From positions 186,001 through 250,000 of the IMG/VR virus record IMGVR_UViG_3300047476_002078: a stretch of DNA of 64,000 nt, one strand, 5' to 3'. The position numbers and the translations under genes were made by a program. The notes under the pieces are model-generated. The model saw only the letters and a program-made list of their open reading frames with translations. It made no database searches and had not been told where the DNA came from. Of the stretch, positions 475 through 58,861 are shown piece by piece. How positions within the stretch are numbered: position 1 is the first letter of the stretch; every line of letters starts with the position of its first letter.

Positions 475-1893
475 TTGTTATCTAAGAAATATAGACCTTC
501 TACATTTGCAGATTTAATCGGACAAGAGGATAATGTAATCATTCTAAAAGAGTACATCAAGAATGGTTTAATTACTCCTCTTCTCTTTACAGGTCCTTTC
601 GGTAGTGGAAAAACTTCAGCTTCTCGTGTAACAGCTAAAGCTATACTATGCCACAATTTAACTGAAGAACTAGAGCCTTGTTGCAAATGTCAAAGCTGTA
701 TTGATTTCTCAGAAGATAGAAATATTAATTATACAGAGATAGACGCAGCTTCAAACGGCGATGTTGAATCAATAAGAAATCTTAGAGAGCAAGTAGGGTA
801 CTCTTCAGTAGGTTCAAAGTTTAAAATTACAAATATTGATGAAGCACATAACATAACTAAAGCAGGTTATAACGCCTTATTAAAACAATTAGAAGAAGGT
901 TACGAGCATCATATTTTTATGTTTTGTACAAATGAGCCTGAGAAAATGTTATCCACGGTTCGATCTCGCTGTTGGAGAATTCATAGTCAAGCAGTCTCCT
1001 CTGAAAATTTATTTGAATACGTAAAAAACATTGCAGCGAAAGAAAAAATAAATGCTGAAGAAGAGGCGTTGAAACTAATCTGTGATGTTACCGCTCCGCA
1101 TATAAGAGATACTCTAAACGCAATAGATTTTCTAAACTATAAAGGTAGTGTTAATAAATCTGACGTTGAAGTTTATTTCCAAATATCTGACAAAAATAAA
1201 TTTTTAGAAATGTTGATATATTTAAAAACAGATTTGCCTAAAGCTATATACGCTTTGGATGAATTATCGAGTAGATATGATATTGATACTATTTTTTCAA
1301 AATTGGTTGAACAGTGTTTAATCCTAGAATCAAAAATAAAAGGGGTTAATTTAAAACATGACTATGTTGATTCTGAATTATTGGAACAAGCCCTTTCTCT
1401 TAAAATTGATTTTTTAGGAGTATCTTCATATCTGTTAAAAGTAGATAGACATGTTGATATGATCTACCTAAAGCACTTACTTCTTGAACTTAATAGAATT
1501 TTAAATGACGAAACCACGGCACAGTATGGAACCCCTGTTCATATTATTCGTGATATTCAAGTAATAAATTCGACACAAATAGGCGATATACCTAAAAATA
1601 TTGAAAAACCTATTGAAACGACAACTATAATATCTCCTGAAGAGGCATCGTTTAGCGGTTTTGATATAAGCAACATAATGAAGTTGTCTGACGCAAAACC
1701 TAAAAAATTGAACGATACCCAAAAACTGAAAAGTGTAAATGTTAAAACCGCATTTGGAAGTACAAAAGGGGCTGTCGAAAACGAACAATATCTTACAAAC
1801 AAGATCGGAAATAAACCTGTTCCTGTTTCAGATGTTAAAGCGTATTTAGACAAAGTGTTGGCGAAAAATGATAGCAAGAAAAAACAAATTTAA
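475..1893 (+). CDS. dnaX: DNA polymerase III subunit gamma/tau (clamp-loader ATPase)
   Basis: KYRPSTFADLIGQE start, Walker A GPFGSGKT, Zn module C..PCCKCQSC, EIDAAS, Walker B-like IDEAH, TVRSRC (SRC motif). Confidence 0.93.
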   Translation: MLSKKYRPSTFADLIGQEDNVIILKEYIKNGLITPLLFTGPFGSGKTSASRVTAKAILCHNLTEELEPCCKCQSCIDFSEDRNINYTEIDAASNGDVESIRNLREQVGYSSVGSKFKITNIDEAHNITKAGYNALLKQLEEGYEHHIFMFCTNEPEKMLSTVRSRCWRIHSQAVSSENLFEYVKNIAAKEKINAEEEALKLICDVTAPHIRDTLNAIDFLNYKGSVNKSDVEVYFQISDKNKFLEMLIYLKTDLPKAIYALDELSSRYDIDTIFSKLVEQCLILESKIKGVNLKHDYVDSELLEQALSLKIDFLGVSSYLLKVDRHVDMIYLKHLLLELNRILNDETTAQYGTPVHIIRDIQVINSTQIGDIPKNIEKPIETTTIISPEEASFSGFDISNIMKLSDAKPKKLNDTQKLKSVNVKTAFGSTKGAVENEQYLTNKIGNKPVPVSDVKAYLDKVLAKNDSKKKQI

Positions 1894-2539
1894 ACCTACC
1901 GTAAAAAAGAAAGCATCTTCCGTAAAATCTAAGTCTAAATCCCCTCCTAAGAAACAAGTTAAAAAACAAATTAAAATTTTTGAAAAAACATCTAACTGGG
2001 TAGCACTAGAGCTAACCCAGCGAGGAGAAACGGAAAAAGACGTTCAAATACTTGTTGATCTCATCAAAAGAAGTCTGGGCGACCCAAATTTAGAAATATT
2101 CGTTCCCATTTACTATGAAAATGAAGAATTTTTTGAAAAAAATGTTTCTCTTTTTAGCGGTTACTTCTTTATACGTCATGCAAAAGGATTGCCTTACCAC
2201 AAGTTAAAAGAAACTAAGTATTTTGAAGGGGTGGTTTGTAATCCTATGACAAATGAACCTGAAATAATCCCAAATTCTCAAATAGACTCACTTAAAGAAA
2301 AGTTTGAAAATTTAATTGAACAAGCATCACAAATAAAAGTTGGTCAAACTGTTAGGCTTTTGGATGGTCTTTATAAGAATTTAACAGGCAAAGTTACAAG
2401 AGTAATTAAAAAAGAAAAAATGTGCATCATTAAAATTACAAGTTTAAAAAGCCGGAATATCACAATATCTGCTCCTTTTATGAGTGTTCTTGTGGAAGAG
2501 GATATGGAAGACAATTCAGATGTTCCGACATTTTTTTAA
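1868..2539 (+). CDS. nusG: NusG/RfaH-family transcription elongation/antitermination factor with Lys-rich N-terminal extension
   Basis: NGN-like WVALELT..GE, IFVPI, LFSGYFFI; KOW motif IKVGQTVRLLDGLYKNLTGKV. Confidence 0.8.
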   Translation: MIARKNKFKPTVKKKASSVKSKSKSPPKKQVKKQIKIFEKTSNWVALELTQRGETEKDVQILVDLIKRSLGDPNLEIFVPIYYENEEFFEKNVSLFSGYFFIRHAKGLPYHKLKETKYFEGVVCNPMTNEPEIIPNSQIDSLKEKFENLIEQASQIKVGQTVRLLDGLYKNLTGKVTRVIKKEKMCIIKITSLKSRNITISAPFMSVLVEEDMEDNSDVPTFF

Positions 2540-2545
2540 GGGGTA

Positions 2546-3178
2546 TTGATGGGTTCAATATTTGTTCAAGCTATTGATTCTAATGAATTAGAAGCACGAT
2601 TTAGCAATGATGACAGGTTAATGTACTTTGGTCAAAGTAAGTATTCTCTTGATGATGTAAAACCTTACTTGGCAATGCTACCGAAAAAAGAAGCTGATTT
2701 GATTTTGATGTATTACATACTTAAAAAAGATCAAAAAGAGATAGCAAAAATTTTAAATTTATCCCAAGGCGGAGTATCTCACCGAATCGCTCGTGCCCGT
2801 GAAAGACTTAAATTTCTTATTTCTATTCCTAAATTTTCTCGATCTGAACTATTTGAAGACCTAAAAAACATAATTGAAGAAGAAGTTGATTTAATTATCA
2901 TGTGGGAGCTTTATAAAACTACATGTCAAAGCCAAGTTGCGGAAGTTGTCGGAATGACCCAATCAAGAGTCAGACACCGCTTTATGAAGTCTTTAAAGAT
3001 ACTTGAAGATAAATCAGAAACATGTGAAAAATTAAAAATATACTTTGAAGCTTTTCACCAAATATCAAAAAATTTCAATATTCTGCATGAAATTAGTCTT
3101 CCTAAGTGGGCACATAAGAATAAGGACTACAAAGATATTCGTTTGAAGAATGTAAAGAAGGCTAAAAAATCGAAGTAA
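2546..3178 (+). CDS. Protein with two sigma70 region-4-like HTH domains
   Basis: LPKKEADLILMYYILKKDQKEIAKILNLSQGGVSHRIARARERLK is a typical sigma-4 HTH; second copy TCQSQVAEVVGMTQSRVRHRFMKSLKIL. No region 2 seen. Confidence 0.7.
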   Translation: MMGSIFVQAIDSNELEARFSNDDRLMYFGQSKYSLDDVKPYLAMLPKKEADLILMYYILKKDQKEIAKILNLSQGGVSHRIARARERLKFLISIPKFSRSELFEDLKNIIEEEVDLIIMWELYKTTCQSQVAEVVGMTQSRVRHRFMKSLKILEDKSETCEKLKIYFEAFHQISKNFNILHEISLPKWAHKNKDYKDIRLKNVKKAKKSK

Positions 3179-3203: not shown

Positions 3204-4076
3204 ATGAAAATAAGCCTTAAAAAAAGGTCTGACACTGACCCATCTTCTCCAAATAGAGCGTTTGATTGGCAAACAGGCAAGACCTATACGCAATTTCAAA
3301 GATTCCGTATGCCCGGTGAAGATAGAAACACTCATAGCGTTCTACCGGGCGACTCACTGGCAAACCCTTTTCTTAAAATACATCCAAAGTATTTGAGAAA
3401 AATGTATCAAATAGAAACTGACATCAAAGTAAAGAAGTTAATTTGGAAGGCTTTGAAGCAATGGGCACGTTTGTATAGTGATTCACTAATAAATCCTTAT
3501 AAATACGATAAATATTTCAATGATATAAAAAATGATTATAAATATTTAGATAACGTGGCGGAAAAAATATCTTCAAAATTCGCTGAATTTTATCCTTCAC
3601 GGAATTTATTTTATTATCAGTCAGGAGAAACTAACCAATATCCTAACATAGATGATGGTTATTTAGAGCCTACTGTTGGAGATTCAGATGAATTACATAA
3701 CCGTAAATTATTTGTATATCCAAATAAATATGAGCAAAATAGACCTGAGAATCCTTCGTGGGGTGAGGGAGATTTTCAAACCCCTTATGATGGAGAAATT
3801 AACAAAGACTTGGACATTAATAGGGGAGCGAAAATGAGTTTTTTTGATACATTCGTGTGGGGCGAGGTAGAAAATCTCGATAACCTATTCAATAAAAATA
3901 AAAAAGCTTCAATGAAGAAAGTATCTAAAATAGTTAAAGTTGCTGATTTAGAAAATTTCACAAAAATAGGTGAAAACCTTTTGGTTCATAAAAGCGATAA
4001 AGACCTTTGGGCTATGGAAACAGATGATAATGGAAACATAGTTATTAGCAGACTTTTTGAAGGCGATATAATTTAA
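3204..4076 (+). CDS. Hypothetical protein (head-module neighbourhood)
   Basis: 290-aa ORF collinear with its neighbours; no family recognised. Confidence 0.6.
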   Translation: MKISLKKRSDTDPSSPNRAFDWQTGKTYTQFQRFRMPGEDRNTHSVLPGDSLANPFLKIHPKYLRKMYQIETDIKVKKLIWKALKQWARLYSDSLINPYKYDKYFNDIKNDYKYLDNVAEKISSKFAEFYPSRNLFYYQSGETNQYPNIDDGYLEPTVGDSDELHNRKLFVYPNKYEQNRPENPSWGEGDFQTPYDGEINKDLDINRGAKMSFFDTFVWGEVENLDNLFNKNKKASMKKVSKIVKVADLENFTKIGENLLVHKSDKDLWAMETDDNGNIVISRLFEGDII

Positions 4077-4088
4077 GGATAAAAGTAT

Positions 4089-5555
4089 ATGTCAAAAAAC
4101 ACAATCGACAATTTTTTTAACGACGCTGTAGCAGACCATGAATGGTTGGATGCTAATGATAAGGTGAACGCACCTTTTAGCGATTACCCAAGCTACAATA
4201 AACTTCCTGAATTAGCTTTTCAAGAAATGCCTCAACCTTTACATAAAGATTTTTTGAAAACCAAAGAAGCTAACATTGAAAAGGTTTCCAACGAAGTTAA
4301 AAAACAACTTATGTTAGGAAAATCTTTAAAACATGTTAAAGAGTCTGTGATTGATAACTTACCTGTGTCTATTAAGGTTTCTGCTTATCATGAACTAACT
4401 AAAATCGCAGAAGAGTTTCCTTTATTAGGAACGGTGTATATTGAACCTTCAGCATTTGGAGATAATGCAAAAAGTTGTGTTAATGGGTCTAATATACTCA
4501 ATCAAAAAAATTCTAGTAAACTTGCTATCTATGCCAAAAAGATGGCTTCTTGCGGTGGATGCTCTTATAACCAAGGTGGGGTTTGCAGACTTTACAAAAA
4601 AGCCTTAGTAGAAGAAATTCCTTATACTGAAAAAACATTTAACCATTATAAAAATCATCTCGTAGTCGCAAATAAAGTCGCTTCATCAAAGCAAATAACT
4701 TCTAAAGAAGAGTTAAAAAACGCTTTAATGTCTATCAACAGTGTTAAAAAAGAAGCTTCATCTGTTGTTTACCACAATGAATCTAAGCGTACAGCTACTA
4801 CAAAATCAGCAACATATAATTTTGAAAATAAAGAAAAGATAGATATTTCAAAAGATTTATCTTTGAAACTCGCTTCGGGAATTGAAGCAAGTATTTTTAA
4901 AAATTATGTAACGACTAAATATTCTTCTGAGTATAAAAAATATCCTGAAGTTTTTTCTAAATATGCAGGATTTGTAGGAAGTTTAGGTCGAGTTTTTATT
5001 GAATTATCCGCTTTTAATTCTTTAGCAGAAGCTAAAAATTTTATTGTCAGAAATGCAAGTAAAGTTCCTTTTGTTTTATCTGATAACAAAAGAAAATATA
5101 CTGATCTTGATGAAAAATTCTTGGGTAAAAAAATCATATCTTCTTTAAAAGAAATCCCTATGAAATATTGGGAAAACAATTTAAAAGGTTTCTCTTTCAA
5201 TCCGTCTGATTTGAAGTCTAACCCTCTAGCTGTCACGAAAAAAGCTTTTCTCAAAACAGAGAAAGTCAAAACTGCTTCCCATGTAGAAACTTTTGATATG
5301 GAAAGAGAAATTGATATTAATGGTTTTGACCCATCGTATAATAATTCTGATAAAAAGATTCAACCTAAGATTAAAAAGGAAAGAGAAGTAAAAAGCTCCA
5401 AGCCCGTGCCTGCCGAAGGTTTTAAGAAATCAGCTACATCTTTAGTCGAAACTGTTAAAACAGAAGACGCAAAGGTTAAGGTTAGATTAGATAAATCATT
5501 AGAAGTTGAAATGGAATCAACTGATTTCGATCAGAGCATATCAAAATACTTATAA
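4089..5555 (+). CDS. Hypothetical protein with Cys cluster, rich in [KR]-x-A-[ST] motifs; possible head/internal protein
   Basis: 488-aa ORF; C..CGGC..C cluster; nine [KR]xA[ST] motifs; upstream of the terminase genes. Confidence 0.55.
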   Translation: MSKNTIDNFFNDAVADHEWLDANDKVNAPFSDYPSYNKLPELAFQEMPQPLHKDFLKTKEANIEKVSNEVKKQLMLGKSLKHVKESVIDNLPVSIKVSAYHELTKIAEEFPLLGTVYIEPSAFGDNAKSCVNGSNILNQKNSSKLAIYAKKMASCGGCSYNQGGVCRLYKKALVEEIPYTEKTFNHYKNHLVVANKVASSKQITSKEELKNALMSINSVKKEASSVVYHNESKRTATTKSATYNFENKEKIDISKDLSLKLASGIEASIFKNYVTTKYSSEYKKYPEVFSKYAGFVGSLGRVFIELSAFNSLAEAKNFIVRNASKVPFVLSDNKRKYTDLDEKFLGKKIISSLKEIPMKYWENNLKGFSFNPSDLKSNPLAVTKKAFLKTEKVKTASHVETFDMEREIDINGFDPSYNNSDKKIQPKIKKEREVKSSKPVPAEGFKKSATSLVETVKTEDAKVKVRLDKSLEVEMESTDFDQSISKYL

Positions 5556-5614: not shown

Positions 5615-6268
5615 ATGTCAAACGATAAAAAATATAAAGAAATAGATTTAGATAATATCGAAAATGATGATGATTTAAAAAGAAAGGCTGAAGCTCTGAT
5701 CGAGCAAGAAGTCTCTAAAAACTCCTCTTATACTTCAAGCTACAGTCAACCTATTATACCTACAACAATACACGGCTCAGTACCTTCCCCTTCACAAAAA
5801 ATTGATGCTGATAAATACAAAAGCGAAAAAACTAACTTTATCGTGGAGGATAATCTTTTAAAGATGATACGTGAAGGTTCCAACAGCTTTGCTTTGCTAG
5901 ATAAAGTGATTGAAGAGATAGCCGAAGAATCAGCCAGTTTAAAATTTGATCGTAATTTCAGTGAAAGCCTTTTCGCTTTAGCTGGAGAGAACACTAAAGT
6001 TTCAAAAGCTAGAGCACAAATTCTGAAAACAATTGGTGATCTTCTTGTTACTAAGAGGGAGCTTGCAAAAAACGATGTTATTAATTTGAAGGGCAAGAGG
6101 ATGCAAGCAGTCTTCAAATATTTTATGACAGTCATCAAAACATCCATAGATCAAACTGAATCAATACTTCCAGAGCAAAAAGAACTTTTTTGGTCTAACC
6201 TGCAAAAGAATTTAGTTGATTTTGAAGAAAACGCTGAAAAAGTTATGTCAAAAGTAGAGGAAGAATGA
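5615..6268 (+). CDS. Probable terminase small subunit
   Basis: Directly upstream of TerL with ATGA overlap; helical/coiled-coil character. Assignment rests on position only. Confidence 0.45.
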   Translation: MSNDKKYKEIDLDNIENDDDLKRKAEALIEQEVSKNSSYTSSYSQPIIPTTIHGSVPSPSQKIDADKYKSEKTNFIVEDNLLKMIREGSNSFALLDKVIEEIAEESASLKFDRNFSESLFALAGENTKVSKARAQILKTIGDLLVTKRELAKNDVINLKGKRMQAVFKYFMTVIKTSIDQTESILPEQKELFWSNLQKNLVDFEENAEKVMSKVEEE

Positions 6269-8982
6269 GCATTGCAAATTTAGCAGGTTCTTTCATCCAG
6301 CAAAATGATGATGGAAGAGTTGCAGACATTATTACTTTTTGTGAGGCTCCTTGGGGTTTAAATATGAACCTCAAGACAGGTAACACAACTTTAAGACCTG
6401 TTCAAAAATTAGTAATGAAGTGTTACTACAATCTTGAACTTGATAATAAAGAAAAATCAATTATCGTTCGAGACTTCTTGAACGAAGAAGAAAAATACAG
6501 ATTCACAGAACAAGAATATCTTCACTTCCTTTATAACGAAGGAAGAACAAACATAAAAGAAGTTGGAAGTAAGTTAAGAAACGAATTAGTTTTAGTGGCT
6601 GGTCGAAGGGGAGGAAAATGCCTCAAAGAAGGAACGCTTATTTTAACTCCCAAAGGTCCTGTAGAAATTGAAAAAATTAAAGCAGGCGACACAGTTTATG
6701 GATACAATGCAGATGGTTCAGTAAGCCCTACTAAAGTTTTGAATGTAGCCGATCAAGGTATTCAAGAAGTTGTTGATTTAACTTCAGGTACAGAAGTTAT
6801 TCAAACTTGTACATTTAATCACAAATGGTTGACTATAGATGAAATAAACGACAAAAAAACTGAAAAAACACCTTCAACTTTTTGTAAAAGAGAGGGGAAT
6901 CAGTATGCAAATATTGTAAGAAAAATAATTAAAATACCTTGTGGAGATGTTGAAGAGTCTCATGCTTATGGTATCGGAAAATATCCGTGGGGAAAAATTG
7001 TAGATTTAGATGTCGTTAAAAAATGGAATCGTGAGTCTTTGTTAAATTTTTTAGCAGGTTTTCTTGATACTGATGGAAGCGTAAGCGTTTCAGAAAATAC
7101 AATTTCAATAGAATTTTTTTGTCAATCAAAGTCGATTCTTGAAGCAGTAGATTACGCTTTTTTAACTTTGTTCCAATATAAACTTAATTGGAGCATTGAT
7201 AAACGAGATGTAAATGAAACTGTTTATCGACTAAGAATGAAAAACAATTTTTTTGCTAAAGCCGCTTTGCGTGAACTTAATGATTATTTGGTTAATCCTG
7301 CAAGAAAATGGAAACCTGAATATGAATCATTTTTGGAAAATAACTCTAATCCTTATTATGTCGGAGTAAAATTAGGTAAAAAATATGAAGCTAGAACTTA
7401 TGATATTGAAGTAGATAATGAAACAAGTCTTTATGTTTTAGCAAACCAAGGATTAGTAACACACAATAGTAAATTAGGTGCTATTGTTTCTGCTTACGAG
7501 GCATACAGCTTAATTAAAAAACAACATCCTCAAAGAGCTTACGGTCTTACAGACAACGCTGAGATTTATCTTACAACCGTTGCAACATCCACAGAGCAGG
7601 CGGAACTCCTCTTTAATGATATTGCTGCTTATATAGACAGTTCTCAATTTTTTAACCGCTACAAGAATGACCCTACTCTTCAGTTCATGAAGTTGAGATC
7701 ACCTTATGATATTGAAAATAGCGGTCAAGATGGTCGAACTTCAATCATTATTAAAGCCGCTCCGTGTTCCGGTCGAGGTCTTCGTGGTATGGCAAACATT
7801 GTTATTATCATGGATGAGCAAGCCCACTTTATTGATTCTTCTACCAACAAATCTGACGCTGCTATTTATGAAGCTGTAACACCTTCAACTCTTTCATTTG
7901 GTAAAGATGCTAGAATTTTAAATATTAGTTCTCCTCTTAACAAACAGGGAAAACTTTGGGAATTATACAACGCATCATTTCAATCTGAAAAGATTTTAAT
8001 GTTTCAAATACCGACGTGGGAACTTTACCCTCAAGTTGACTCCTCTGAATTAAGAGAAAGATACCGCCGAAATCCAGATGTATATTGGTGTGAAATTGGA
8101 GCAAAATTTTCTGATACCGTAAAATCTTGGATGCCTGTTGAACAGTTGGTAAAATGTATAGAGCCTACCCTCAAGCCAAAGCTTAGAGGTCTTCCAAAAA
8201 CGGAACACTTTATGGGGATTGATATAGGTCTTAAAAAAGACCAAACTGCCATAACTGTTCTTCATGTTGAAAACAAGAGAGAGCCTGTTTTCAATGTAAA
8301 CGGTCAATTAATTGACGAAATCATAGTTCCAAAATACGAGCTTGATTACCAAGAGGTTTTACAAGCAGGCGTTGGTAAACACGTAGGTAGAGAGTTTTTA
8401 GATTTCGATAATATCGCTGACAGGATTGAAAGTGTCTGTAAAGATTTTATGGTCGTGAAAGGTTTATTTGACCAATATAACGGCGTTCCTTTGATGCAAT
8501 CTCTCCAGAAAAAAGGATTGAACCAGTTTTCTATGGTGTATTTTGACCGTAGATTCAATTCAGAACTTTACAATAATTTTATGCTTCAAGTCATTGATGG
8601 GAAATTAGTTTTATTCGACGACCCTGAATCAAGTCAGCCCTTGGCTGAAGGTAAGCATGGACCTTTTATTTCTGAAATAATTGACCTTCAGAGTGAATTT
8701 ATATCAAAATATATTACACAGGTGTTTGCTCCCGAAATTGAAGGTAAGCACGATGACCGCTCTGACTCATTTGTTCGAGCTTTGTGGTGTGCGACGGAAT
8801 GGCTTACAAAAAATAAAGATAATTCGGGGCAGTTTTTACCGTCTTTGCAATTTACGGAAAATGGTAATTCTTCAGGTATGCAAGCAAGGAAGCATAGACC
8901 TTACATGAATCAAAGAGTTGGAACGTCTAACAATAGAGCTAGTCCATACTCCGTGTTTTTTAATAAGAGAGGAAGGCGTTGA
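6265..8982 (+). CDS. terL: Terminase large subunit containing an intein
   Basis: Walker A LVAGRRGGK/S split by the intein, Walker B IVIIMDEQ, RNase H-like nuclease motifs MGIDIG, FDQYN and HDDRSDS; upstream of portal. Confidence 0.92.
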   Translation: MSIANLAGSFIQQNDDGRVADIITFCEAPWGLNMNLKTGNTTLRPVQKLVMKCYYNLELDNKEKSIIVRDFLNEEEKYRFTEQEYLHFLYNEGRTNIKEVGSKLRNELVLVAGRRGGKCLKEGTLILTPKGPVEIEKIKAGDTVYGYNADGSVSPTKVLNVADQGIQEVVDLTSGTEVIQTCTFNHKWLTIDEINDKKTEKTPSTFCKREGNQYANIVRKIIKIPCGDVEESHAYGIGKYPWGKIVDLDVVKKWNRESLLNFLAGFLDTDGSVSVSENTISIEFFCQSKSILEAVDYAFLTLFQYKLNWSIDKRDVNETVYRLRMKNNFFAKAALRELNDYLVNPARKWKPEYESFLENNSNPYYVGVKLGKKYEARTYDIEVDNETSLYVLANQGLVTHNSKLGAIVSAYEAYSLIKKQHPQRAYGLTDNAEIYLTTVATSTEQAELLFNDIAAYIDSSQFFNRYKNDPTLQFMKLRSPYDIENSGQDGRTSIIIKAAPCSGRGLRGMANIVIIMDEQAHFIDSSTNKSDAAIYEAVTPSTLSFGKDARILNISSPLNKQGKLWELYNASFQSEKILMFQIPTWELYPQVDSSELRERYRRNPDVYWCEIGAKFSDTVKSWMPVEQLVKCIEPTLKPKLRGLPKTEHFMGIDIGLKKDQTAITVLHVENKREPVFNVNGQLIDEIIVPKYELDYQEVLQAGVGKHVGREFLDFDNIADRIESVCKDFMVVKGLFDQYNGVPLMQSLQKKGLNQFSMVYFDRRFNSELYNNFMLQVIDGKLVLFDDPESSQPLAEGKHGPFISEIIDLQSEFISKYITQVFAPEIEGKHDDRSDSFVRALWCATEWLTKNKDNSGQFLPSLQFTENGNSSGMQARKHRPYMNQRVGTSNNRASPYSVFFNKRGRR
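6619..7467 (+). other. Intein (283 aa) with partial LAGLIDADG homing endonuclease
   Basis: Starts CLKEGTLILT (block A, Cys1), ends LVTHN followed by +1 Ser; internal FLAGFLDTDGSV motif. Removal restores GRRGGKS. Confidence 0.93.
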
Positions 8983-9344
8983 AAATTAAAAACCAAGATG
9001 AAGCCAGAAAGGTTTTGAGCAAAGTTAATGAGAAAAGCCGCCAAATGCTTGCAGACTTTTACGAACTTCAAAAAAACCTGACTGAATTAGAAAGGTTTTT
9101 TAGATCAGACTCGGAAAATTACAAAAATTTTACTAATGTTAATTCTATTCGGATTGCAGGGAACGAAATAGCTAGAATCAGTCGTAAAGTTCCTCCTGTA
9201 GGTTCGGTTTTAAAGCACCTATCTAACATTACATACCCTTTGACTTTTACGGAAGAACCTTTTGTGTATCCAAAAAAAGAATCTCCTAATAAAATCAATA
9301 AGAATGTAGTTGTACCTAAAATAAATTTGGAAGATGAAGAATAA
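8979..9344 (+). CDS. Hypothetical protein
   Basis: 121-aa ORF overlapping the terL stop and abutting the portal start. Confidence 0.6.
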   Translation: MKIKNQDEARKVLSKVNEKSRQMLADFYELQKNLTELERFFRSDSENYKNFTNVNSIRIAGNEIARISRKVPPVGSVLKHLSNITYPLTFTEEPFVYPKKESPNKINKNVVVPKINLEDEE

Positions 9345-11050
9345 TGGAAAATAATAAGAAAAAGATGCCTGTAGTTCAGGTAAATAAAAATCCACATCCC
9401 TCAAAAGTTAAAAATAACCGTAAGTACGCTACCGCTCAGTTGACTCGAAATAAGACGGCAAGCCCTGATACAATGTTATCTTCCGCTAGTAATATATTTT
9501 CGTTTCAGTTAGGTACAGACTTTCTTGAAAAACCACAAAACCTTAAAGAGAAGCGAGCGGTATATAGATACTTGGCTAGTTCAGATGAGTTCGTAAATCG
9601 TGCTTTAGAACTCAAGGTTTCGATACCTTTATCTAAAGTCAGACTTAATCCTCCCGATGGAAGAAACTTTGAAAAGAATCAATACATTTTAGATTTTTAT
9701 GAAAAGATGTGTAATAGAATCAAACTTTTTGAGCGTTTATGCCAAATTGTTTACGAGTATTATCTTCATGGAGTTTGTTACACTTTTACAGAAGATCAAG
9801 ATGAAGACGAAGAACTTGATCTTGAAAATTTAGATGCTGAATTAGCAAAAATGCTTGAAGATGAGAAAAAAGAATTAGCAAACGGTCAACCTCTTGCTAA
9901 AGATAAATATGACGTAGTTGAGCCTTCTTATGAAGGGTGGAAAAGACTTGTAATTCTTCCTCCAGACGCAGTTGAAGTAACAACATATCCATTTAGTGAC
10001 AGGGTTGACGTTAGAGTAATACCTCCAGTCAACACGAAGAATAATCAGCTTTCTCCTGACGAAGAAGGGGTTCTATCCGGAATACCTGAAGAAATTAAAA
10101 ATTCTATGCAGGAAGGAAAAATTCCTCTCGATACAGACCCTAATACAGGTTCATTTGTTCACGTATTAAAGAGAGGGGGAAGTTATTACGATGATTTAGG
10201 TCAATCTCTGTTAGACCCTATTCTCGGAACAATGGTTTATAGAGAAAAACTTCGTCAAGCTCAAACATCAATTGCTTCAAGACACATGACTCCTATTAGA
10301 GTGGTTTGGGGTGAGAATTTGTCTTCTTTCCACGTTGATGATTTAAGAGCACAGGTTGATCTTGCCTTGCAAGACCCTGATTATTCAATCATCGCTAACT
10401 ATGAAATTAACTGGCAAGAGTTCGGCTCTAACGACAGATTAATGGATTTAACTTCTGAGTACGAAGAAACAGAAAAAAGAATGATGGTAGCATTAGGATT
10501 CACTTCTGAAATTTTAAGAGGTGAGGGAACCTATGCAGGAAACAGACTTAATCTTGAAATTATCAACACTGAATTTTTACATCTACGTCAAATCATATCT
10601 TCTTTTATTGAAGAGTATATCTTTGCCCCAATTGCAAAGAGGAAAGGTTTTTACGAAATAGATAAATTCGGGAACAAAAAATTGCTTTATCCTAAATTGA
10701 GCTTTAGCCGTCTTGCCCTTAAAGACAACCAAGAAGTGTTTAGCTCCTTACTCGATTTATATCAGAAAGGTGCTATACCTATCTCTTATGTTCTTGATTT
10801 ATTTAACATTGATGATAAGTCAGCCTTTAAAGAAATGAAAGATGACTTATTTACGCCTAGAGACTCTACGTATAATGAGTTTTTACGAGGTATTAATCAG
10901 TCTGTTTCTCAAAAATTTGCAGATGAAACCAATATTTTTGATCTTTTTGTAGATAAGCTAAAAAATGTGGGTATTAAAAAGCAAGAGGCTCCTCAAGAAG
11001 GGGGAGGAGATATGGCTAGATTTGCAAACAAAAGTCAAAATAAAGTATGA
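9344..11050 (+). CDS. Portal protein
   Basis: 568 aa, downstream of TerL, helical portal-like pattern (RMMVALGFTSEILRGEGTYAG, FIEEYIFAPIA). Confidence 0.75.
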   Translation: MENNKKKMPVVQVNKNPHPSKVKNNRKYATAQLTRNKTASPDTMLSSASNIFSFQLGTDFLEKPQNLKEKRAVYRYLASSDEFVNRALELKVSIPLSKVRLNPPDGRNFEKNQYILDFYEKMCNRIKLFERLCQIVYEYYLHGVCYTFTEDQDEDEELDLENLDAELAKMLEDEKKELANGQPLAKDKYDVVEPSYEGWKRLVILPPDAVEVTTYPFSDRVDVRVIPPVNTKNNQLSPDEEGVLSGIPEEIKNSMQEGKIPLDTDPNTGSFVHVLKRGGSYYDDLGQSLLDPILGTMVYREKLRQAQTSIASRHMTPIRVVWGENLSSFHVDDLRAQVDLALQDPDYSIIANYEINWQEFGSNDRLMDLTSEYEETEKRMMVALGFTSEILRGEGTYAGNRLNLEIINTEFLHLRQIISSFIEEYIFAPIAKRKGFYEIDKFGNKKLLYPKLSFSRLALKDNQEVFSSLLDLYQKGAIPISYVLDLFNIDDKSAFKEMKDDLFTPRDSTYNEFLRGINQSVSQKFADETNIFDLFVDKLKNVGIKKQEAPQEGGGDMARFANKSQNKV

Positions 11051-11069
11051 ATTTTTACCTTTATAGAAA

Positions 11070-11300
11070 ATGACTGTAGCAGAGAAATTTATTAAAAATT
11101 TAAAGGCGTTAGCAGATAAAAAAGTATTTACTGAAGAAGAAGTATCTTTCATTCTTTTGTCTTTACAAGAAACCGCTACTTTATCGCCATTAGAACTCAT
11201 AAGTCTGCTAGATAATGTAGATGTCTGCTTTGAGGAAGCATTAAAAGAAATGCCCCAAGATGAGTTTGACGCTTTGAAAAAAGAATTGCTTGAGGAGTAA
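11070..11300 (+). CDS. Hypothetical protein
   Basis: 76-aa acidic ORF in the operon; its 3' end carries the RBS of the next gene. Confidence 0.5.
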   Translation: MTVAEKFIKNLKALADKKVFTEEEVSFILLSLQETATLSPLELISLLDNVDVCFEEALKEMPQDEFDALKKELLEE

Positions 11301-11302
11301 AA

Positions 11303-13078
11303 ATGTCATTCGTTAAACGCTTATCACCTTTAGTAACAGTTAAAAGAAAGACAAATACGGATAAGGTTCCCACAGGTCTTCTTGGAACTAATGCTGTAAG
11401 CACAAATATGTTACAGAATGGTGCTGTGACTCTTGAAAAGCTCTCATTTGATATTGGTGGATATGTTGGAAGTTTTACTAACCGAATTCCAAGTGTTGTA
11501 ACAAGCGGAACAGAGGGACAAGCGGTTTATTTCAACGGCACTTCTTATGTTCCTTGTATTGCGGATGATTTATCAACATCTAAGTTTTCAGGTATTTTAG
11601 TTTTAAATACGTTTACGAATCAATTAGACTTAGTAACTTCTGGAGTAGTTTCAGGATACACTGGTTTAGTAGCAGGGACGATTTTTTATTTAAGTCAAAG
11701 TAATGCAGGTGAAATAACAGACGTGCGTCCTTTTACTGGAATTGTTCGTCCTATCGGAATTGCAATTTCTAATTCTGAAATTCAAATAATCCAACCGATA
11801 ACGCAAAATATTAGTAATGAGTCTTCGATTATACGAAAAGCCCCGATGGCAGATGTAGGCTTAGGTAAAGCTGTTTATTATAATTCATCAACAAATGCTT
11901 TTGAATTAGCCGATAACACATCATTCGCTCTTTCAAGAGTTGTAGGTCTTTCGCTTTTAAATGAATTAGGAGTAGCCACAGATATATTACTATCAGGAAT
12001 TATTGAACTTTCTGGATTATCTGTAGGCTCGACTTATTTTTTAGATGCTTCAGGAGAGATTACAGACACTTCACCAAGCTCAGGTTTTGCAGTTGAGATT
12101 GGAAAAGCTATCACGGAAACGAAACTTTTAGTTGATATTAAATATCTTGGTATTTATAGTGCAGGAACAGGTCCGACTACGATTAACTGGAACAATGGTG
12201 ATGTTCAATCTTGTAGCGTGACTGCTAACATTACAACATTTAGTAACGGCGTATCTGGTAAAATTTATACTTTAATTACGACTACTAACGGAACTCAATA
12301 TAGTTTTCCTAGCTCAGTAACGCCTTCAACATCTAGTAGTTCTTTACCTAACGGCTCAGTAGTTGTTTATCAATTTCTTTGTGAAAGCCCCTCAGTTTAC
12401 AGAAATATTTCTTATGGGGAACCTACAACATTTTTTAGTGCAGGAACAGGTCCGACTACGATTAACTGGAACAACGGTTCTACTCAATCATTAACTTTAA
12501 CTGCTAACATTACAAGCTTCAACAATGGAGTAGCTGGCAGGCTATACACTTTGCTCGTTACCTCTAATGGTACTTCTTATACCCTTCCAACATCTTTAGT
12601 AAATTGGGATGGAATAGTTCCTCAATCAGGAGCGACTTTTACCCTCCTTATATTATGTATTGATTCATCGACATACAGAATTTTAAATACTCCGTACATA
12701 ACTTCAAACGAGTATGATTACGTTGTTGGTACTTCATCACAAGTAACTAACGGTCTGGCTACACATTCAAGTTTACAGTCTGCAATCACACAAGCTGCTG
12801 CTAACTCTAAAATTTTAATTTTAAAAGGTTACTCCCTTTCAGAAAATGTTACCTTGAATAAAACTATGAATATCGACGGCGAAGGTAGAACTTCCGCCAT
12901 AACAGGTAATTTGACTCTTGGAGCGGACTGCGACTTTAGCATAATTAGAGATATAAGAGTTACGGGAAATGTCGTTTTTAGTGCAGGCTCAAGTTTTAAT
13001 TTTTTACGAGACTCTTGGGTGGGAGGAACTGTTACTGATTCCGGAACAAGTAATTCAGTATTAGTAATACAGGCTTAA
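11303..13078 (+). CDS. Virion fibre/decoration protein (two cement-like repeats, two 93-aa repeats, C-terminal beta-helix-like segment)
   Basis: Gly/Thr/Ser-rich; repeated G.AVY...G....SG...GL..G..Y.L...G.IT modules; tandem TTINWNNG..QS..TANIT.F.NG..G..YTL units. Confidence 0.65.
   Translation: MSFVKRLSPLVTVKRKTNTDKVPTGLLGTNAVSTNMLQNGAVTLEKLSFDIGGYVGSFTNRIPSVVTSGTEGQAVYFNGTSYVPCIADDLSTSKFSGILVLNTFTNQLDLVTSGVVSGYTGLVAGTIFYLSQSNAGEITDVRPFTGIVRPIGIAISNSEIQIIQPITQNISNESSIIRKAPMADVGLGKAVYYNSSTNAFELADNTSFALSRVVGLSLLNELGVATDILLSGIIELSGLSVGSTYFLDASGEITDTSPSSGFAVEIGKAITETKLLVDIKYLGIYSAGTGPTTINWNNGDVQSCSVTANITTFSNGVSGKIYTLITTTNGTQYSFPSSVTPSTSSSSLPNGSVVVYQFLCESPSVYRNISYGEPTTFFSAGTGPTTINWNNGSTQSLTLTANITSFNNGVAGRLYTLLVTSNGTSYTLPTSLVNWDGIVPQSGATFTLLILCIDSSTYRILNTPYITSNEYDYVVGTSSQVTNGLATHSSLQSAITQAAANSKILILKGYSLSENVTLNKTMNIDGEGRTSAITGNLTLGADCDFSIIRDIRVTGNVVFSAGSSFNFLRDSWVGGTVTDSGTSNSVLVIQA
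12157..12474 (+). repeat. Intragenic tandem duplication, period 279 nt, with a 39-bp identical core
   Basis: TAGTGCAGGAACAGGTCCGACTACGATTAACTGGAACAA at 12157-12195 and 12436-12474. Confidence 0.9.
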
Positions 13079-13082
13079 CCAA

Positions 13083-15140: not shown

Positions 15141-15159
15141 ATATAGATGGAGAAAAAAT

Positions 15160-15903
15160 ATGTCAGAAATAATTCCAATTTTAGGAAATGCTACAGTATC
15201 AGAAGTAATTGAAGCTGTTAAGCATATACCTATCCTTAAAAATGAAGATATTTCTTTTTTGCAAGAAAACTCTCGTCATCTCGCAACAGTAATTGAAAAG
15301 ACACACATTTGGAGAACAGATACTCAAAAACTATCTATCATTAATGATGTTCAGTTTCCAACAGCACACGCTAAACTGCACCAATCTATGTTAGAGCAAA
15401 AAGTTCAGTTCGACCAAGCTATGTATCTGGCGAAAGATTTTGAGTTTAAAAAATTAGAGGCAGAAGAAAAACAATTAGACTTGTCAGAACTTGGTGATTC
15501 AGCAAGGGATAAAATTAAAAAGAAAAAATTAGAAATTGAACTTCAATTTATAAACTATGAATTGAAGCAAATGCAAATTTCTATGCACTATAGGATGGAA
15601 GAAATTAAAGGTTGGCAAAAGATTCAAAATGAACTTTTAGATGATCTAAGAGCTTCAGGTATGTCTGAAGAGGAAATTTGGTCTAAAAACGCAGGCGAGC
15701 TTAAATTTATGTTTTACTACGCTCTCAACAATCTTCAATCACTTCCAACTACAACTGATAGTGCTGAACGCTCGAATCTTATTTCTATTGCACTTTTTTC
15801 TTACAAGAACGCTCAAAGAGCAGGTATGTTGGAAGAATTTAAAAAAGGTTGCAATTCTATTCAATTAGATTCTTTAAACTGGTTAGAAAAACAATTGGGG
15901 TAA
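15160..15903 (+). CDS. Coiled-coil protein of the type often found beside Kelch-repeat phage fibre genes
   Basis: Start moved to ATG 15160 (GGAG RBS). WRTDTQ..SIINDVQFPT.HAK..Q resembles phage proteins adjacent to Kelch genes (recalled, not searched). Confidence 0.55.
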   Translation: MSEIIPILGNATVSEVIEAVKHIPILKNEDISFLQENSRHLATVIEKTHIWRTDTQKLSIINDVQFPTAHAKLHQSMLEQKVQFDQAMYLAKDFEFKKLEAEEKQLDLSELGDSARDKIKKKKLEIELQFINYELKQMQISMHYRMEEIKGWQKIQNELLDDLRASGMSEEEIWSKNAGELKFMFYYALNNLQSLPTTTDSAERSNLISIALFSYKNAQRAGMLEEFKKGCNSIQLDSLNWLEKQLG

Positions 15904-35031: not shown

Positions 35032-35322
35032 TTAGCAAACAACAGTTGCGACTTTTCCGTAATTCATAAAAATTTGATAAGCTTTTAAAGCTATTGAAGG
35101 AGGAAGGATTTCTTTAGCAGCCTCGGCACGTCTTTTTGCCTTGAGTGCGTCTTTAATAGATTTTGCCATTTGTCTGCAAAGCTGAAGCATCTTGTCTTCG
35201 CTTCCTTTAGACTTTGTAACAATATCTTCAAGACGTTTATAGTCTTTTTCTTCAGGTTCGTCGGTTTTACCGTCAGTTAGTTTAGCTTCAAGAAATCGAA
35301 TTTGATCTATTAAGTTTTTCAT
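35032..35322 (-). CDS. Hypothetical protein
   Basis: 96-aa helical ORF in the minus-strand run. Confidence 0.55.
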   Translation of the reverse strand: MKNLIDQIRFLEAKLTDGKTDEPEEKDYKRLEDIVTKSKGSEDKMLQLCRQMAKSIKDALKAKRRAEAAKEILPPSIALKAYQIFMNYGKVATVVC

Positions 35323-54352: not shown

Positions 54353-55354
54353 TTAACCTAATCTGAGTAATATTTTTGAAGCTATTTTTTTCTTAGCTAC
54401 TAATATTTCTCTAGCATCTTCAAAAGAAGATAACTCTAGTTTTTTGAAAATCTTTCCTAAATCTTTAACGAAGTATTGAACAAAATCTGAAAACTTTTTA
54501 TCGTCCATATTTAGTTCGTTCATGAATTTCTTTTGATCTGCTTTAACAAACGGGTCGAATCCGTCAGCTATGAGATTTAAAGCCTTTTCATATAAAGGAT
54601 TTAACTTTTTAACTTCTTGATAAAGTTCTTTTTTTATAGCTTTTGCTTCGTTTTTAGTGTGGCTTGATTCATCTTGAAAAAGTTTATCTTCTCTCACTCC
54701 ATCAAATGACTCATCATCTCTTGATATTATCCTTACGGCAGTATTAAGAGCATCTTCTGTTTTGTTAGTTTTTTCTAAAATTTTGATAGCCATATTTTTT
54801 GCAGCCGTGTACCAAAATTTAGTGAAAGAACCTATTGAAGGATTGTAGCTCTTAAATATAGCGTCTCTTATTCTTTTACCTTGCATTACTTTTTCAGGAC
54901 TAATTTTTTTTGTTGGTGTTTTTTCACCGTCATAAAATTTCTTTAAATAAGACAAATCTGGTATGTTGTATTCTTTGGATAGACTAACAATCCAGTCATT
55001 ATCAATTATTTGTTCAAAGCTTAAACCTTTTGATTTAAGGTTTATGACAGCTACAGGAAGCATTTGAAATTTTAAGTATTTGTAATCAAACTTTTTTTCT
55101 TCATCTGTAAGATTTGGGAATATTAAACGATGTACAGCATCTATAGCTATATGTTCATAATAATCTTTAGCTCCTGCATCTTTGGCAGCTTTGAACGCTA
55201 AGTTCATTAAATTTGTATTTTTAGGTAAGTTTATTTCGTGTTCTTTTGCTAACTCAATTAACATATTGTTAAATCTAGTTATTTCTGCGTTTGCAAAAAT
55301 CTTTCGTTTAATTTTTTCAAAAACTGAGTTTGCTATTTTTTTATAATTTATCAT
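54353..55354 (-). CDS. Divergent ECF-like sigma factor candidate
   Basis: FKSYNPSIGSFTKFWYTAAKNMAIKIL resembles region 2.3-2.4; AKD...EHIAIDAV resembles 2.1-2.2; C-terminal LYEKALNL.ADG..QKKFMNELNM resembles a sigma-4 HTH. Confidence 0.5.
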   Translation of the reverse strand: MINYKKIANSVFEKIKRKIFANAEITRFNNMLIELAKEHEINLPKNTNLMNLAFKAAKDAGAKDYYEHIAIDAVHRLIFPNLTDEEKKFDYKYLKFQMLPVAVINLKSKGLSFEQIIDNDWIVSLSKEYNIPDLSYLKKFYDGEKTPTKKISPEKVMQGKRIRDAIFKSYNPSIGSFTKFWYTAAKNMAIKILEKTNKTEDALNTAVRIISRDDESFDGVREDKLFQDESSHTKNEAKAIKKELYQEVKKLNPLYEKALNLIADGFDPFVKADQKKFMNELNMDDKKFSDFVQYFVKDLGKIFKKLELSSFEDAREILVAKKKIASKILLRLG

Positions 55355-58857: not shown

Positions 58858-58861
58858 TATT

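What the first reader, a model, noticed from the sequence alone, without database searches (positions are those of the whole stretch)
4089..5555. Recurrent [K/R]-x-A-[S/T] motif: candidate prohead-protease cleavage or head-targeting signal
The 488-aa protein has nine matches: KMAS, KVAS, KEAS, RTAT, KSAT, KLAS, RNAS, KTAS, KSAT. A rough composition estimate gives about one by chance. The motif also ends the basic N-terminal leader of the portal (KYAT, KTAS) and occurs in 3204..4076 (KKAS), 35032..35322 (KVAT) and 54353..55354 (KIAS). T4 gp21 and phiKZ gp175 cleave head proteins at short x-x-Glu motifs; a basic-x-Ala specificity would be a different maturation code.
Basis: inference. Interest (0 to 1): 0.6.

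Follow-up and report, generated by a model that had tools for sequence, protein, structure and literature searches.

The report
Likely capsid-protease cut sites (K-x-A-S)
A four-residue motif (Lys/Arg-x-Ala-Ser/Thr) that crowds one 488-residue protein of a 356-kb phage also recurs, at conserved places, in the phage's capsid protease, scaffold and portal, so it is most likely the cutting signal of that protease: a signal that resembles the herpesvirus Ala-Ser sites rather than the Glu sites known from T4 and phiKZ.

Summary
The 488-aa ORF (4089-5555) has nine [KR]-x-A-[ST] matches against 0.8 expected. No global or local shuffle reached nine. It is the top outlier of about 560 ORFs in the complete 355,874-bp phage genome.

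The next-ranked proteins cluster 108 kb away around a prohead protease (gp21/assemblin fold), an acidic scaffold and the major capsid protein. An unbiased scan of all exact three-residue gapped patterns in those seven genes puts K-x-A-S first (11 vs 1.1).

The enrichment repeats in five related huge-phage records: 2.2-5.3x around the protease, 1.1-1.5x elsewhere. All 15 members of the 488-aa family have 5-9 sites against about 1 expected.

Sites sit where capsid proteases are known to cut:
- directly after the protease domain (61/116 homologues strict, 86/116 loose, 9% null);
- 20-45 residues before the conserved scaffold C-tail;
- in the portal N-leader;
- in disordered linkers of the 488-aa protein.

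Best reading: K/R-x-A|S is this protease family's cleavage motif, and the 488-aa protein is a heavily processed head-internal substrate. Cleavage itself is inferred, not shown. This is a new variant of a known kind.

The parts
4089..5555 (+). 488-aa orphan protein (P0001) with nine [KR]-x-A-[ST] sites. Proposed to be a multiply processed head-internal (core or ejection-type) substrate of the prohead protease.
   Evidence: Searches give the counts and controls. It has no Pfam, PHROG, PDB-fold or Atlas match. Fourteen homologues all carry 5-9 sites against about 1 expected. The gene order X / P0001 / p217 / TerL / p121 / portal is conserved.
4476..4586 (+). Four invariant cysteines (C130, C155, C158, C166) forming a C...CxxC...C module next to 'LLGxVYI[DE]'. 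Probably metal-binding. KMAS151 lies inside it.
   Evidence: The alignment A1 shows the invariant columns. The module is repeated two to three times in the 640-672-aa relatives of G002, G004 and G005. Metal binding is inferred.
4674..4685 (+). Site KVAS196, at the end of a helix. Kept as a strict motif in 10 of 14 homologues.
4749..4814 (+). Disordered linker (residues 215-245, pLDDT below 50) holding three sites: KEAS221, RTAT234 and KSAT239.
   Evidence: One search gives the pLDDT. One search shows partial conservation with turnover of positions.
4866..4877 (+). Site KLAS260, inside a helix of the confidently folded domain (250-390). Conserved as LKLASG. Cleavage here is the least certain.
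5049..5060 (+). Site RNAS321, at the end of a helix in the folded domain. The same position is KTAS or KNAS in the 26-27%-identical G002 and G004 proteins.
5268..5279 (+). Site KTAS394, at the start of the disordered C-linker (391-453). The motif is kept in 10 of 14 homologues while the surrounding sequence is not, which is the behaviour of a short linear motif.
5427..5438 (+). Site KSAT447, about 40 residues before the C-end. It precedes a small conserved C-terminal beta domain (455-488).
3204..4076 (+). 290-aa protein 'X'. KKAS233 (nt 3900-3911) precedes a conserved C-terminal 'HKSxxDLWA...RLF' domain. A site sits at this place in all 4 orthologues found.
9344..11050 (+). Portal protein. KYAT27 (nt 9422-9433) and KTAS37 (nt 9452-9463) lie in the basic N-leader. 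K-Y-A-T sits about 25 residues before the conserved core in G000-G003.
   Evidence: phrog_16240 at E = 1e-17.
6265..8982 (+). Large terminase carrying an intein. Together with the portal it marks this part of the window as the packaging/head block.
5615..6268 (+). 217-aa protein always found between the P0001 family and TerL. It may be the small terminase, but this is not shown. It has no motif.
   Evidence: The function is inferred from position only.

Best explanation
Lys/Arg-x-Ala-Ser/Thr is the substrate recognition motif of this phage's prohead (capsid maturation) serine protease. The scissile bond is most likely Ala|Ser, giving P3 = K/R, P1 = Ala, P1' = Ser.

The protease is encoded 108 kb downstream of the finding, at genome 298039-299670. 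It is made as a precursor with these parts in order:
- a catalytic domain of about 270 residues;
- a K-A-A-S site;
- a low-complexity (PEQAQ)n linker;
- a C-terminal domain holding two more sites.

Inside the procapsid the protease would do four things:
- free itself at the post-domain site;
- cut the acidic coiled-coil scaffold 20-45 residues from its conserved C-tail, which presumably binds the capsid shell;
- trim the portal N-leader and several small head-module proteins;
- cut the 488-aa protein of the finding at up to nine places.

The 488-aa protein is therefore best read as a head-internal core or ejection-type protein that is packaged as a precursor and processed into fragments, as T4 gp22 and the internal proteins are, or the phiKZ inner-body proteins.

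Shown here: the motif statistics, the identity and fold of the protease, and the positional conservation of the sites.

Inferred: that the sites are cut, which bond is cut, and that the 488-aa protein resides in the head.
For: 1. Statistics for the 488-aa protein.
- P0001 has 9 sites against 0.79 expected. No global or local shuffle reached 9.
- It ranks first among 552 ORFs of the complete genome.

2. Independent data set in the same genome.
- The next-ranked proteins cluster around the protease gene.
- In that seven-gene block, with the repeat masked, K.AS is the top pattern of about 48,000 exact three-residue gapped patterns. It scores 11 vs 1.12, P = 3e-8.

3. Identity of the neighbouring genes.
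- Protease: phrog_18299 at E = 2e-12. The AF2 model has pLDDT 73. The best structural matches are T4 gp21 (Z 10.6, rmsd 2.2 A, 124 residues) and VZV protease (Z 10.2), ahead of all unrelated folds (6.9 or less). Foldseek's top rows are mostly herpesvirus proteases plus gp21.
- His103, Ser156 and Asp175 are invariant in 38 homologues.
- The adjacent genes are an acidic helical scaffold and the 289-aa major capsid protein (phrog_2522, E = 1e-50).

4. Replication in five related records (25-45% identity for most head proteins).
- Protease +-4 genes are enriched 2.2-5.3x in all six records, while the rest of each record is 1.1-1.5x.
- K.AS P-values in G001-G004 combine to 1.6e-9.
- All 15 members of the P0001 family have 5-9 sites against about 1 expected. 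The distant homologues also show it: G002 6 vs 1.0, G004 7 vs 0.95.

5. Positions match known processing logic.
- Consensus D-x-[FY]-L-K-A-A-S lies directly after the catalytic domain in 61/116 homologues (strict) or 86/116 (loose). The null rate for random 20-residue windows is 9%.
- Sites flank 'KKGAK.L' and precede the conserved scaffold tail 'LSNLW..PDVS..F' in G000, G001, G002, G004 and G005.
- A site lies about 12 residues from the C-end of the p240 family (3 of the 6 aligned orthologues), K-Y-A-T lies in the portal leader (G000-G003), and a site precedes the conserved C-domain of protein X (4 of 4).
- Five of the nine P0001 sites lie in linkers with pLDDT below 50.

6. Precedent.
- Herpesvirus assemblin frees itself at an R-site after the protease domain and cuts the scaffold at an M-site near its C-end (PMC4498786). 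An HCMV M-site substrate reads ...Asn-Ala-Ser-Ser... (bioRxiv 10.1101/2025.10.17.683123).
- T4, phiKZ and SPN3US proteases use a P3-x-P1 motif, cut core proteins at many sites, and autocleave C-terminally (PMC5694885).
Against: - No protein-level data exist. All relatives are metagenomic and unnamed, so cleavage, the scissile bond and virion residence are untested.
- Two P0001 sites (260, 321) sit in helices of a confidently folded domain, and one (151) sits inside the Cys module. These may be structural rather than cut.
- Part of the within-family count comes from a duplicated module that carries the motif.
- The major capsid protein has no site, so the most classical substrate is absent.
- Strict K.AS is also about 1.4x over expectation in the rest of the genome. 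This may mean more substrates or a mild general bias.
- P0001 is encoded 108 kb from the protease in this genome, although it lies only 10-20 kb away in G002-G005.
- The complex-prediction job gave no verdict.
Confidence: 0.66

Rival explanations
1. The motif is a short linear docking or targeting signal that brings proteins into the procapsid, for example by binding the scaffold, shell or protease. It is not itself a scissile site. Cutting, if any, happens elsewhere.
For: The enrichment is confined to head-module proteins, and the motif is conserved within variable linkers. Both fit a binding motif as well as a cleavage motif. T4 internal proteins use a capsid-targeting sequence (PMC5694885).
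Against: Known targeting sequences are single and terminal. They do not occur nine times per protein, directly after a protease domain, or just before a scaffold C-tail. The Ala-Ser core matches the scissile pair of the structurally related assemblins.
Confidence: 0.12
2. The motif is a post-translational modification site, such as phosphorylation of the Ser/Thr by a basophilic kinase that reads Lys/Arg at position -3.
For: The form [KR]-x-x-[ST] resembles basophilic kinase sites (own knowledge). The strong Ser-over-Thr preference, 79 to 11, is compatible with this.
Against: The complete genome has no protein-kinase domain (PF00069). The invariant Ala at -1 is not a known kinase determinant. 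The positions at domain boundaries and just before terminal tails are typical of processing sites.
Confidence: 0.05
3. The sites are cut by a different enzyme, either a host protease or a second phage protease, rather than by the gp21/assemblin-fold prohead protease.
For: Some Firmicute phages use the host Prp protease, which cuts after Phe-Ala before Ser (own knowledge, not checked here). The identity of the acting enzyme is not shown.
Against: The best-conserved site lies in the prohead protease itself, at its domain boundary, in a family of about 1950 proteins. The enrichment tracks that gene's neighbourhood in six genomes. Prp sites are single and N-terminal.
Confidence: 0.07
4. The pattern is chance, compositional bias or shared ancestry: post-hoc motif picking, Lys/Ala/Ser-rich helices, or a repeated module.
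For: Exact K.AS in P0001 alone does not survive correction. Part of the count comes from a duplicated module.
Against: Local shuffles and permuted motifs fail to reproduce the count. K.AS is the top pattern in an independent gene set. It replicates in six genomes, and it occurs at non-homologous places with positional turnover.
Confidence: 0.03

Closest known systems
Herpesvirus assemblin (MEROPS S21) with its release (R) and maturational (M) sites, consensus (V/L/I)-x-Ala|Ser
   Same: The fold matches: VZV protease Z 10.2, HCMV Z 7.7, KSHV Z 6.0. The precursor has the same layout of protease domain, linker and C-terminal domain, with a site directly after the catalytic domain, like the R-site. 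Sites lie a few tens of residues before the scaffold C-end, like the M-site (PMC4498786). The core is Ala-Ser.
   Different: P3 is Lys/Arg rather than a hydrophobic residue. The scaffold is a separate gene, not a nested in-frame product. The third catalytic residue is probably Asp175, as in T4, rather than a second His, but this was not resolved. The host is bacterial. Many more substrates carry sites.
T4 gp21 (S77) and phiKZ gp175 / SPN3US gp245 (S80) prohead proteases, motifs (L/I)-x-Glu| and (S/A/G)-x-Glu|
   Same: T4 gp21 is the best structural match (5jbl, Z 10.6). The His...Ser...Asp spacing is similar (PMC5694885). The motif has the same P3-x-P1 architecture. Core and internal proteins are cut at many sites. 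The protease autocleaves C-terminally.
   Different: P1 would be Ala, not Glu. P3 is basic, not hydrophobic or small. The major capsid protein has no site or propeptide (289 aa), whereas T4 and phiKZ capsid proteins are trimmed.
HK97 gp4 (S78) and P2 gpO-type protease-scaffold fusions
   Same: These share the clan. The protease carries a C-terminal part involved in incorporation into the capsid. P2 also trims its portal N-terminus. All of this is own knowledge.
   Different: No sequence or structure match to these was seen here. Their specificities are not K-x-A-S as far as I know. This was not tested.
T4 gp22 and internal proteins; phiKZ/SPN3US inner-body and ejection proteins (as analogues of the 488-aa protein)
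   Same: They are proteins with several protease motifs that are processed inside the procapsid. P0001 has 5-9 sites in every family member and lies in the packaging/head gene block.
   Different: P0001 shows no homology to any of them and no match to any known fold. It has conserved Cys4 modules and globular domains, which suggests a function beyond scaffolding.

Membership tests
gp21/assemblin-fold prohead serine proteases (clan SH); applies to the 543-aa protein L001:12039-13670 | Characteristic beta-barrel protease fold. | tested here: met
   The AF2 model has pLDDT 73. VIA-align gives T4 gp21 Z 10.6 (124 residues, 2.2 A) and VZV protease Z 10.2. The next unrelated fold scores 6.9. Foldseek's top rows are mostly herpesvirus proteases plus gp21, but with weak E-values of 0.01-0.1.
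gp21/assemblin-fold prohead serine proteases (clan SH) | Invariant catalytic His and Ser about 50 residues apart, plus a third residue (Asp/Glu in phages, His in herpesviruses). | tested here: inconclusive
   H103, S156 and D175 are invariant in 38 homologues, and H207 is at least 90% conserved. The spacing of 53 is similar to T4 and SPN3US. I could not check the superposition of these residues on the known triads.
gp21/assemblin-fold prohead serine proteases (clan SH) | Sequence-profile match, and a gene placed beside the scaffold and major capsid genes. | tested here: met
   phrog_18299 'head maturation protease' at E = 2e-12. The acidic scaffold lies two genes downstream and the capsid protein four more genes downstream (phrog_2522, E = 1e-50). 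There is no Pfam hit and no PDB sequence hit.
gp21/assemblin-fold prohead serine proteases (clan SH) | Proteolytic activity on head proteins. | not testable with these tools
   This needs expression and assay, or virion proteomics.
Prohead-protease cleavage motif (applies to [KR]-x-A-[ST]) | Enriched in head-module proteins and not in other proteins of the same genome. | tested here: met
   Searches show 2.2-5.3x enrichment around the protease in six records against 1.1-1.5x elsewhere.
Prohead-protease cleavage motif | Conserved as a motif at domain boundaries, leaders or tails while the flanking sequence diverges. | tested here: met
Prohead-protease cleavage motif | Sites lie in accessible or disordered segments. 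| tested here: inconclusive
   Five of nine P0001 sites lie in linkers with pLDDT below 50. Sites 260 and 321 are in helices of the folded domain, and site 151 is in the Cys module.
Prohead-protease cleavage motif | Mature protein ends map to the motif (semi-specific peptides or N-terminal sequencing). | not testable with these tools
   No cultured member and no proteome are available. All relatives are metagenomic.
Herpesvirus assemblin family S21 proper | Ser-His-His triad, and a scaffold nested in-frame in the protease gene. | tested here: not met
   The scaffold is a separate gene. The triad type was not resolved. The protein is therefore not filed as S21; only the site logic is alike.
Head-internal / core protein (applies to the 488-aa P0001) | Encoded with head or packaging genes, carries protease sites, and is present in procapsids or virions. 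| tested here: inconclusive
   The first two features are met. Presence in the particle cannot be tested here.

The most novel reading that the evidence does not exclude
A large, so far unnamed family of T4-gp21-like prohead proteases (about 1950 metagenomic members, mostly on contigs of 100-480 kb) uses a basic-x-Ala|Ser code. It also uses herpesvirus-style wiring: a release site after the protease domain and maturational sites before the scaffold tail. If so, the Ala|Ser specificity and the R/M-site logic thought typical of herpesviruses also exist in tailed phages, either retained from the common ancestor of Duplodnaviria or reinvented. In that case the 488-aa Cys4-module protein is a new class of packaged, multiply processed internal head protein.
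Probability: 0.45. Interest if true: 0.72.

Novelty: new variant of a known kind. Interest (0 to 1): 0.6.

Why it matters
Prohead-protease motifs allow virion substrates and mature protein ends to be predicted from sequence alone. The only well-defined phage codes are the x-x-Glu motifs of T4 and phiKZ-like phages.

A K/R-x-Ala|Ser code would matter for three reasons:
- It would cover a widespread, uncultured huge-phage clade and give a way to annotate its head proteins, including orphan ones such as this 488-aa family.
- It would offer a specific, cheap test using recombinant protease plus peptide.
- It would link phage and herpesvirus capsid maturation at the level of site logic, not only of fold.

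Tried and rejected
- **Family and fold searches on the 488-aa protein.** Pfam and PHROG scans found nothing. tblastn against 50,697 GenBank phages found nothing. The AF2 model had pLDDT 59, and the exhaustive PDB fold search gave only helical-hairpin matches with Z below 7. The ESM Atlas gave no usable hit.
- **PDB sequence search.** A profile of the protease domain found nothing.
- **Complex prediction.** Protease residues 38-285 against P0001 residues 380-488 returned no answer (score 0.01). This is not evidence either way.
- **Hidden class of propeptide-bearing proteins.** I looked for small proteins with N-terminal sites. There were 26 observed against 17.4 expected, with no shared leader, so I did not pursue it.
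- **Kinase rival.** The genome has no Pkinase domain.
- **Jug gut phages.** I considered that the phage might be one of the published 'Jug' phages (360-402 kb). Their GC content of 27-30% differs from the 34% here, and nothing else linked them, so I did not pursue it.
- **Literature.** Searches found no report of a K-x-A-S or Ala|Ser prohead-protease motif in phages. The library does not cover all journals, so this is weak evidence of novelty.
- **Not run.** The read-mapping tools were not used because they cannot address proteolysis.
Full report
**1. What the window is**

The window is bases 186001-250000 of a single 355,874-bp virus record. IMG/VR classes the record as complete, with direct terminal repeats. 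Its GC content is 34%.

The first 11 kb of the window encode, on the + strand:
- a clamp loader;
- a NusG-like protein;
- a sigma-70 region-4 protein;
- a 290-aa protein, here called 'X';
- the 488-aa protein of the finding;
- a 217-aa protein;
- a large terminase interrupted by a Hint/LAGLIDADG intein;
- a 121-aa protein;
- the portal.

Further on lie a family-A DNA polymerase, a DnaB-like helicase, an SNF2 helicase, PhoH and sugar-modifying enzymes. This is a huge tailed phage known only from metagenomes.

**2. The observation**

The nine [KR]-x-A-[ST] matches are present exactly as listed.
- The composition expectation is 0.79, giving Poisson P = 1.7e-7.
- None of 2000 global shuffles reached nine. 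Nor did any of 20000 shuffles at each block size of 15, 30 or 60 residues.
- Permuted versions of the motif occur 0-3 times (KxxAS, with one more spacer residue, 4 times).
- The other 61 ORFs of the window together have 14 matches against about 15 expected.
- Among 552 ORFs called over the whole genome, this protein is the top outlier.

One caution applies. As an exact pattern in this one protein, K.AS (5 vs 0.5) would not survive correction for the roughly 48,000 patterns one could have chosen. I therefore looked for independent replication.

**3. Replication inside the same genome**

The next-ranked proteins are not scattered. They cluster at genome 295.6-301.5 kb (L001:9672-15500). That block holds the following genes:

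| Gene (L001) | Size | Identity | Sites |
|---|---|---|---|
| 9672-10394 | 240 aa | unknown | 2 |
| 10922-11692 | 256 aa | unknown | 2 |
| 12039-13670 | 543 aa | matches 'head maturation protease' phrog_18299, E = 2e-12 | 3 |
| 13881-14156 | 91 aa | unknown | 2 |
| 14193-15500 | 435 aa | very acidic, helical, scaffold-like | 4 |
| 16637-17506 | 289 aa | major capsid protein, phrog_2522, E = 1e-50 | 0 |

I masked the (PEQAQ)n repeat and scanned all exact three-residue patterns with up to two gaps in the seven genes around the protease. K.AS came first, at 11 observed vs 1.12 expected, P = 3e-8. The runner-up had P = 5e-6. Adding the 488-aa protein gives 16 vs 1.6, P = 2e-11.

**4. The protease**

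Its first 285 residues, modelled with 38 homologues, reach pLDDT 73.
- An exhaustive structural comparison puts T4 gp21 first (5jbl, Z 10.6, rmsd 2.2 A over 124 residues) and varicella-zoster virus protease second (Z 10.2).
- HCMV protease scores Z 7.7 and KSHV protease Z 6.0. The best unrelated fold scores 6.9.
- Foldseek's top rows are mostly herpesvirus proteases plus gp21, though with weak E-values.
- His103, Ser156 and Asp175 are invariant. The His-Ser spacing resembles that of T4 and SPN3US (PMC5694885).
- The family is large: 1950 hits at E <= 1e-5. All are metagenomic, unnamed and without a Pfam domain, and many lie on contigs of 100-400 kb.

**5. Replication in other genomes**

Five related IMG/VR records were fetched whole. 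They are 155-436 kb long with 39-62% GC.
- Their capsid proteins are 66-93% identical to this phage's. Most other head proteins are only 25-45% identical.
- In all six records the protease +-4 genes carry 2.2-5.3 times the expected number of [KR]-x-A-[ST]. The rest of each record is at 1.1-1.5 times.
- Strict K.AS in G001-G004 gives a combined P of 1.6e-9.
- Homologues of the 488-aa protein repeat the pattern. All 15 close family members have 5-9 sites against about 1 expected. The 26-27%-identical 640-aa proteins of G002 and G004 have 6 and 7.
- In G002-G005 that gene lies only 10-20 kb from the protease.

**6. Where the sites sit**

This is the strongest argument for cleavage.

(a) Directly after the catalytic domain the proteases read D-x-[FY]-L-K-A-A-S. 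Then come a low-complexity Pro/Ala/Glu/Gln linker and a C-terminal domain with further sites. Among 116 homologues, 61 keep the strict motif there and 86 a relaxed one ([KR]-x-A-[STAGN]). Only 9% of random 20-residue windows contain the strict motif.

(b) In the scaffolds of G000, G001, G002, G004 and G005, sites flank a 'KKGAK.L' stretch. They lie 20-45 residues before a conserved C-terminal tail, 'LSNLW..PDVS..F'.

(c) The p240 family has a site about 12 residues from the C-end in three of the six aligned orthologues.

(d) The portal leader carries K-Y-A-T about 25 residues before the conserved core in four records. Extra K-T-A-S sites occur in the variable leader.

(e) Protein X (window 3204-4076) has its site just before a conserved C-terminal domain in all four orthologues found.

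(f) In the 488-aa protein, five sites lie in linkers with pLDDT below 50 (residues 215-245 and 391-453). The site at 394 is kept in 10 of 14 homologues although its surroundings are not alignable.

Flanking positions show no further preference. The core is K (81%) or R, any residue, A, then S (88%) or T.

**7. Mechanism proposed**

The arrangement in (a) and (b) is that of the herpesvirus protease precursor. That enzyme frees itself at a release site after the protease domain. It cuts the scaffold at a maturational site near the C-end, which binds the major capsid protein (PMC4498786). Herpesvirus sites have Ala|Ser as the scissile pair. An HCMV M-site substrate reads ...Asn-Ala-Ser-Ser.... 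The consensus (V/L/I)-x-A|S is from my own knowledge.

T4, phiKZ and SPN3US proteases use the same P3-x-P1 layout but with Glu at P1. They cut core proteins at several sites and autocleave C-terminally.

I therefore propose K/R(P3)-x-A(P1)|S(P1') as the code of this protease family. It would drive self-release, detachment of the scaffold from the shell, trimming of the portal leader, and multiple cuts in the 488-aa protein.

The scissile bond is inferred by analogy only.

**8. What the 488-aa protein is**

It has no known family or fold. Its features are:
- a conserved N-terminus;
- a helical region (55-110);
- a module 'LLGxVYI[DE] ... C ... CxxC ... C' with four invariant cysteines;
- a well-folded domain (250-390) that is a Cys-less copy of the same module;
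- a small C-terminal beta domain.

Larger relatives have two or three Cys-bearing modules. It always sits in the block X / this protein / p217 / TerL / p121 / portal.

Because every family member has many predicted cut sites, I read it as a packaged core or ejection-type protein precursor. My confidence in that specific role is about 0.5.

**9. Rivals**

Each rival is weighed in the Rival explanations section. In short:
- A non-cleaved docking motif fits the enrichment. It does not fit the multiplicity or the placement directly after the protease domain.
- A kinase site is unlikely. There is no kinase domain in the genome, and the invariant Ala is not a known kinase determinant.
- A different protease is unlikely because the best-conserved site is in the prohead protease itself.
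- Chance or composition is excluded by the controls and by replication.

**10. Limits**

- Nothing here shows a cut bond.
- Sites 151, 260 and 321 may be structural.
- The capsid protein has no site.
- KVAT90 (35032-35322) and KIAS323 (54353-55354) are single, chance-level hits, and the latter is not conserved.
- Strict K.AS is mildly over-represented genome-wide.
- The complex-prediction job returned no answer.
- Literature searches found no prior report of such a phage motif, but the library is incomplete.

**11. Verdict**

It is a new variant of a known kind of system: capsid maturation by a gp21/assemblin-fold protease with a short linear motif. Interest is 0.6.

Noticed in passing
window 6265-8982 (+): The large terminase is 905 aa and carries an intein. 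Hint and LAGLIDADG domains lie between the terminase ATPase and nuclease matches.
   Followed up: partly
G003:95991-98885 and G004:35156-38074 (L081, L087); also P0054, P0077, P0103, P0133: Several prohead-protease orthologues carry an intein of about 450 aa just before the catalytic His (...NY|C...HN|CEHVQ). The portals of G002 and G004 are about 1150 aa and have a large insertion.
   Followed up: partly
L001:12039-13670 (genome 298039-299670): The linker after the protease domain is a perfect (PEQAQ) repeat of about 20 units. The G001 orthologue has (PPAE[AQ])n at the same place. The repeat unit differs but the low-complexity linker is kept.
   Followed up: no
L001:13642-13872 (genome 299642-299872): A 76-aa extremely basic ORF (Arg/Lys-rich) lies between the protease and the 91-aa gene. 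It could be a DNA-binding internal protein or a spurious ORF.
   Followed up: no
genome 347836-355872 (outside the window): About 8 kb at the right end of the genome reads on the minus strand as ORFs made of five-residue CGSLN/CFALN repeats (a 15-nt period). The true strand and frame are uncertain. This may be a repetitive structural gene or the terminal-repeat region.
   Followed up: no
window 1868-3178 (+): A NusG/KOW-like gene and a sigma-70 region-4 gene sit directly upstream of the X / P0001 / TerL block. The same order is kept in G001, which hints at dedicated late-gene transcription factors.
   Followed up: no
window 55351-62323 (-): Two adjacent ORFs of 1168 and 1153 aa have no Pfam or PHROG match.
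   Followed up: partly
P0003 / P0136 (83-96% identical homologues of the 488-aa protein): One public source names these 'anthranilate/para-aminobenzoate synthase component II'. Nothing in the sequence supports that, so it is probably an annotation error.
   Followed up: no
window 4089-5555 and G002:105615-107537, G004:16174-18099, G005:363214-365232: The 488-aa family is built from two to three copies of a module, 'LLGxVYI[DE]' followed by C...CxxC...C. This is an undescribed and probably metal-binding repeat.
   Followed up: partly
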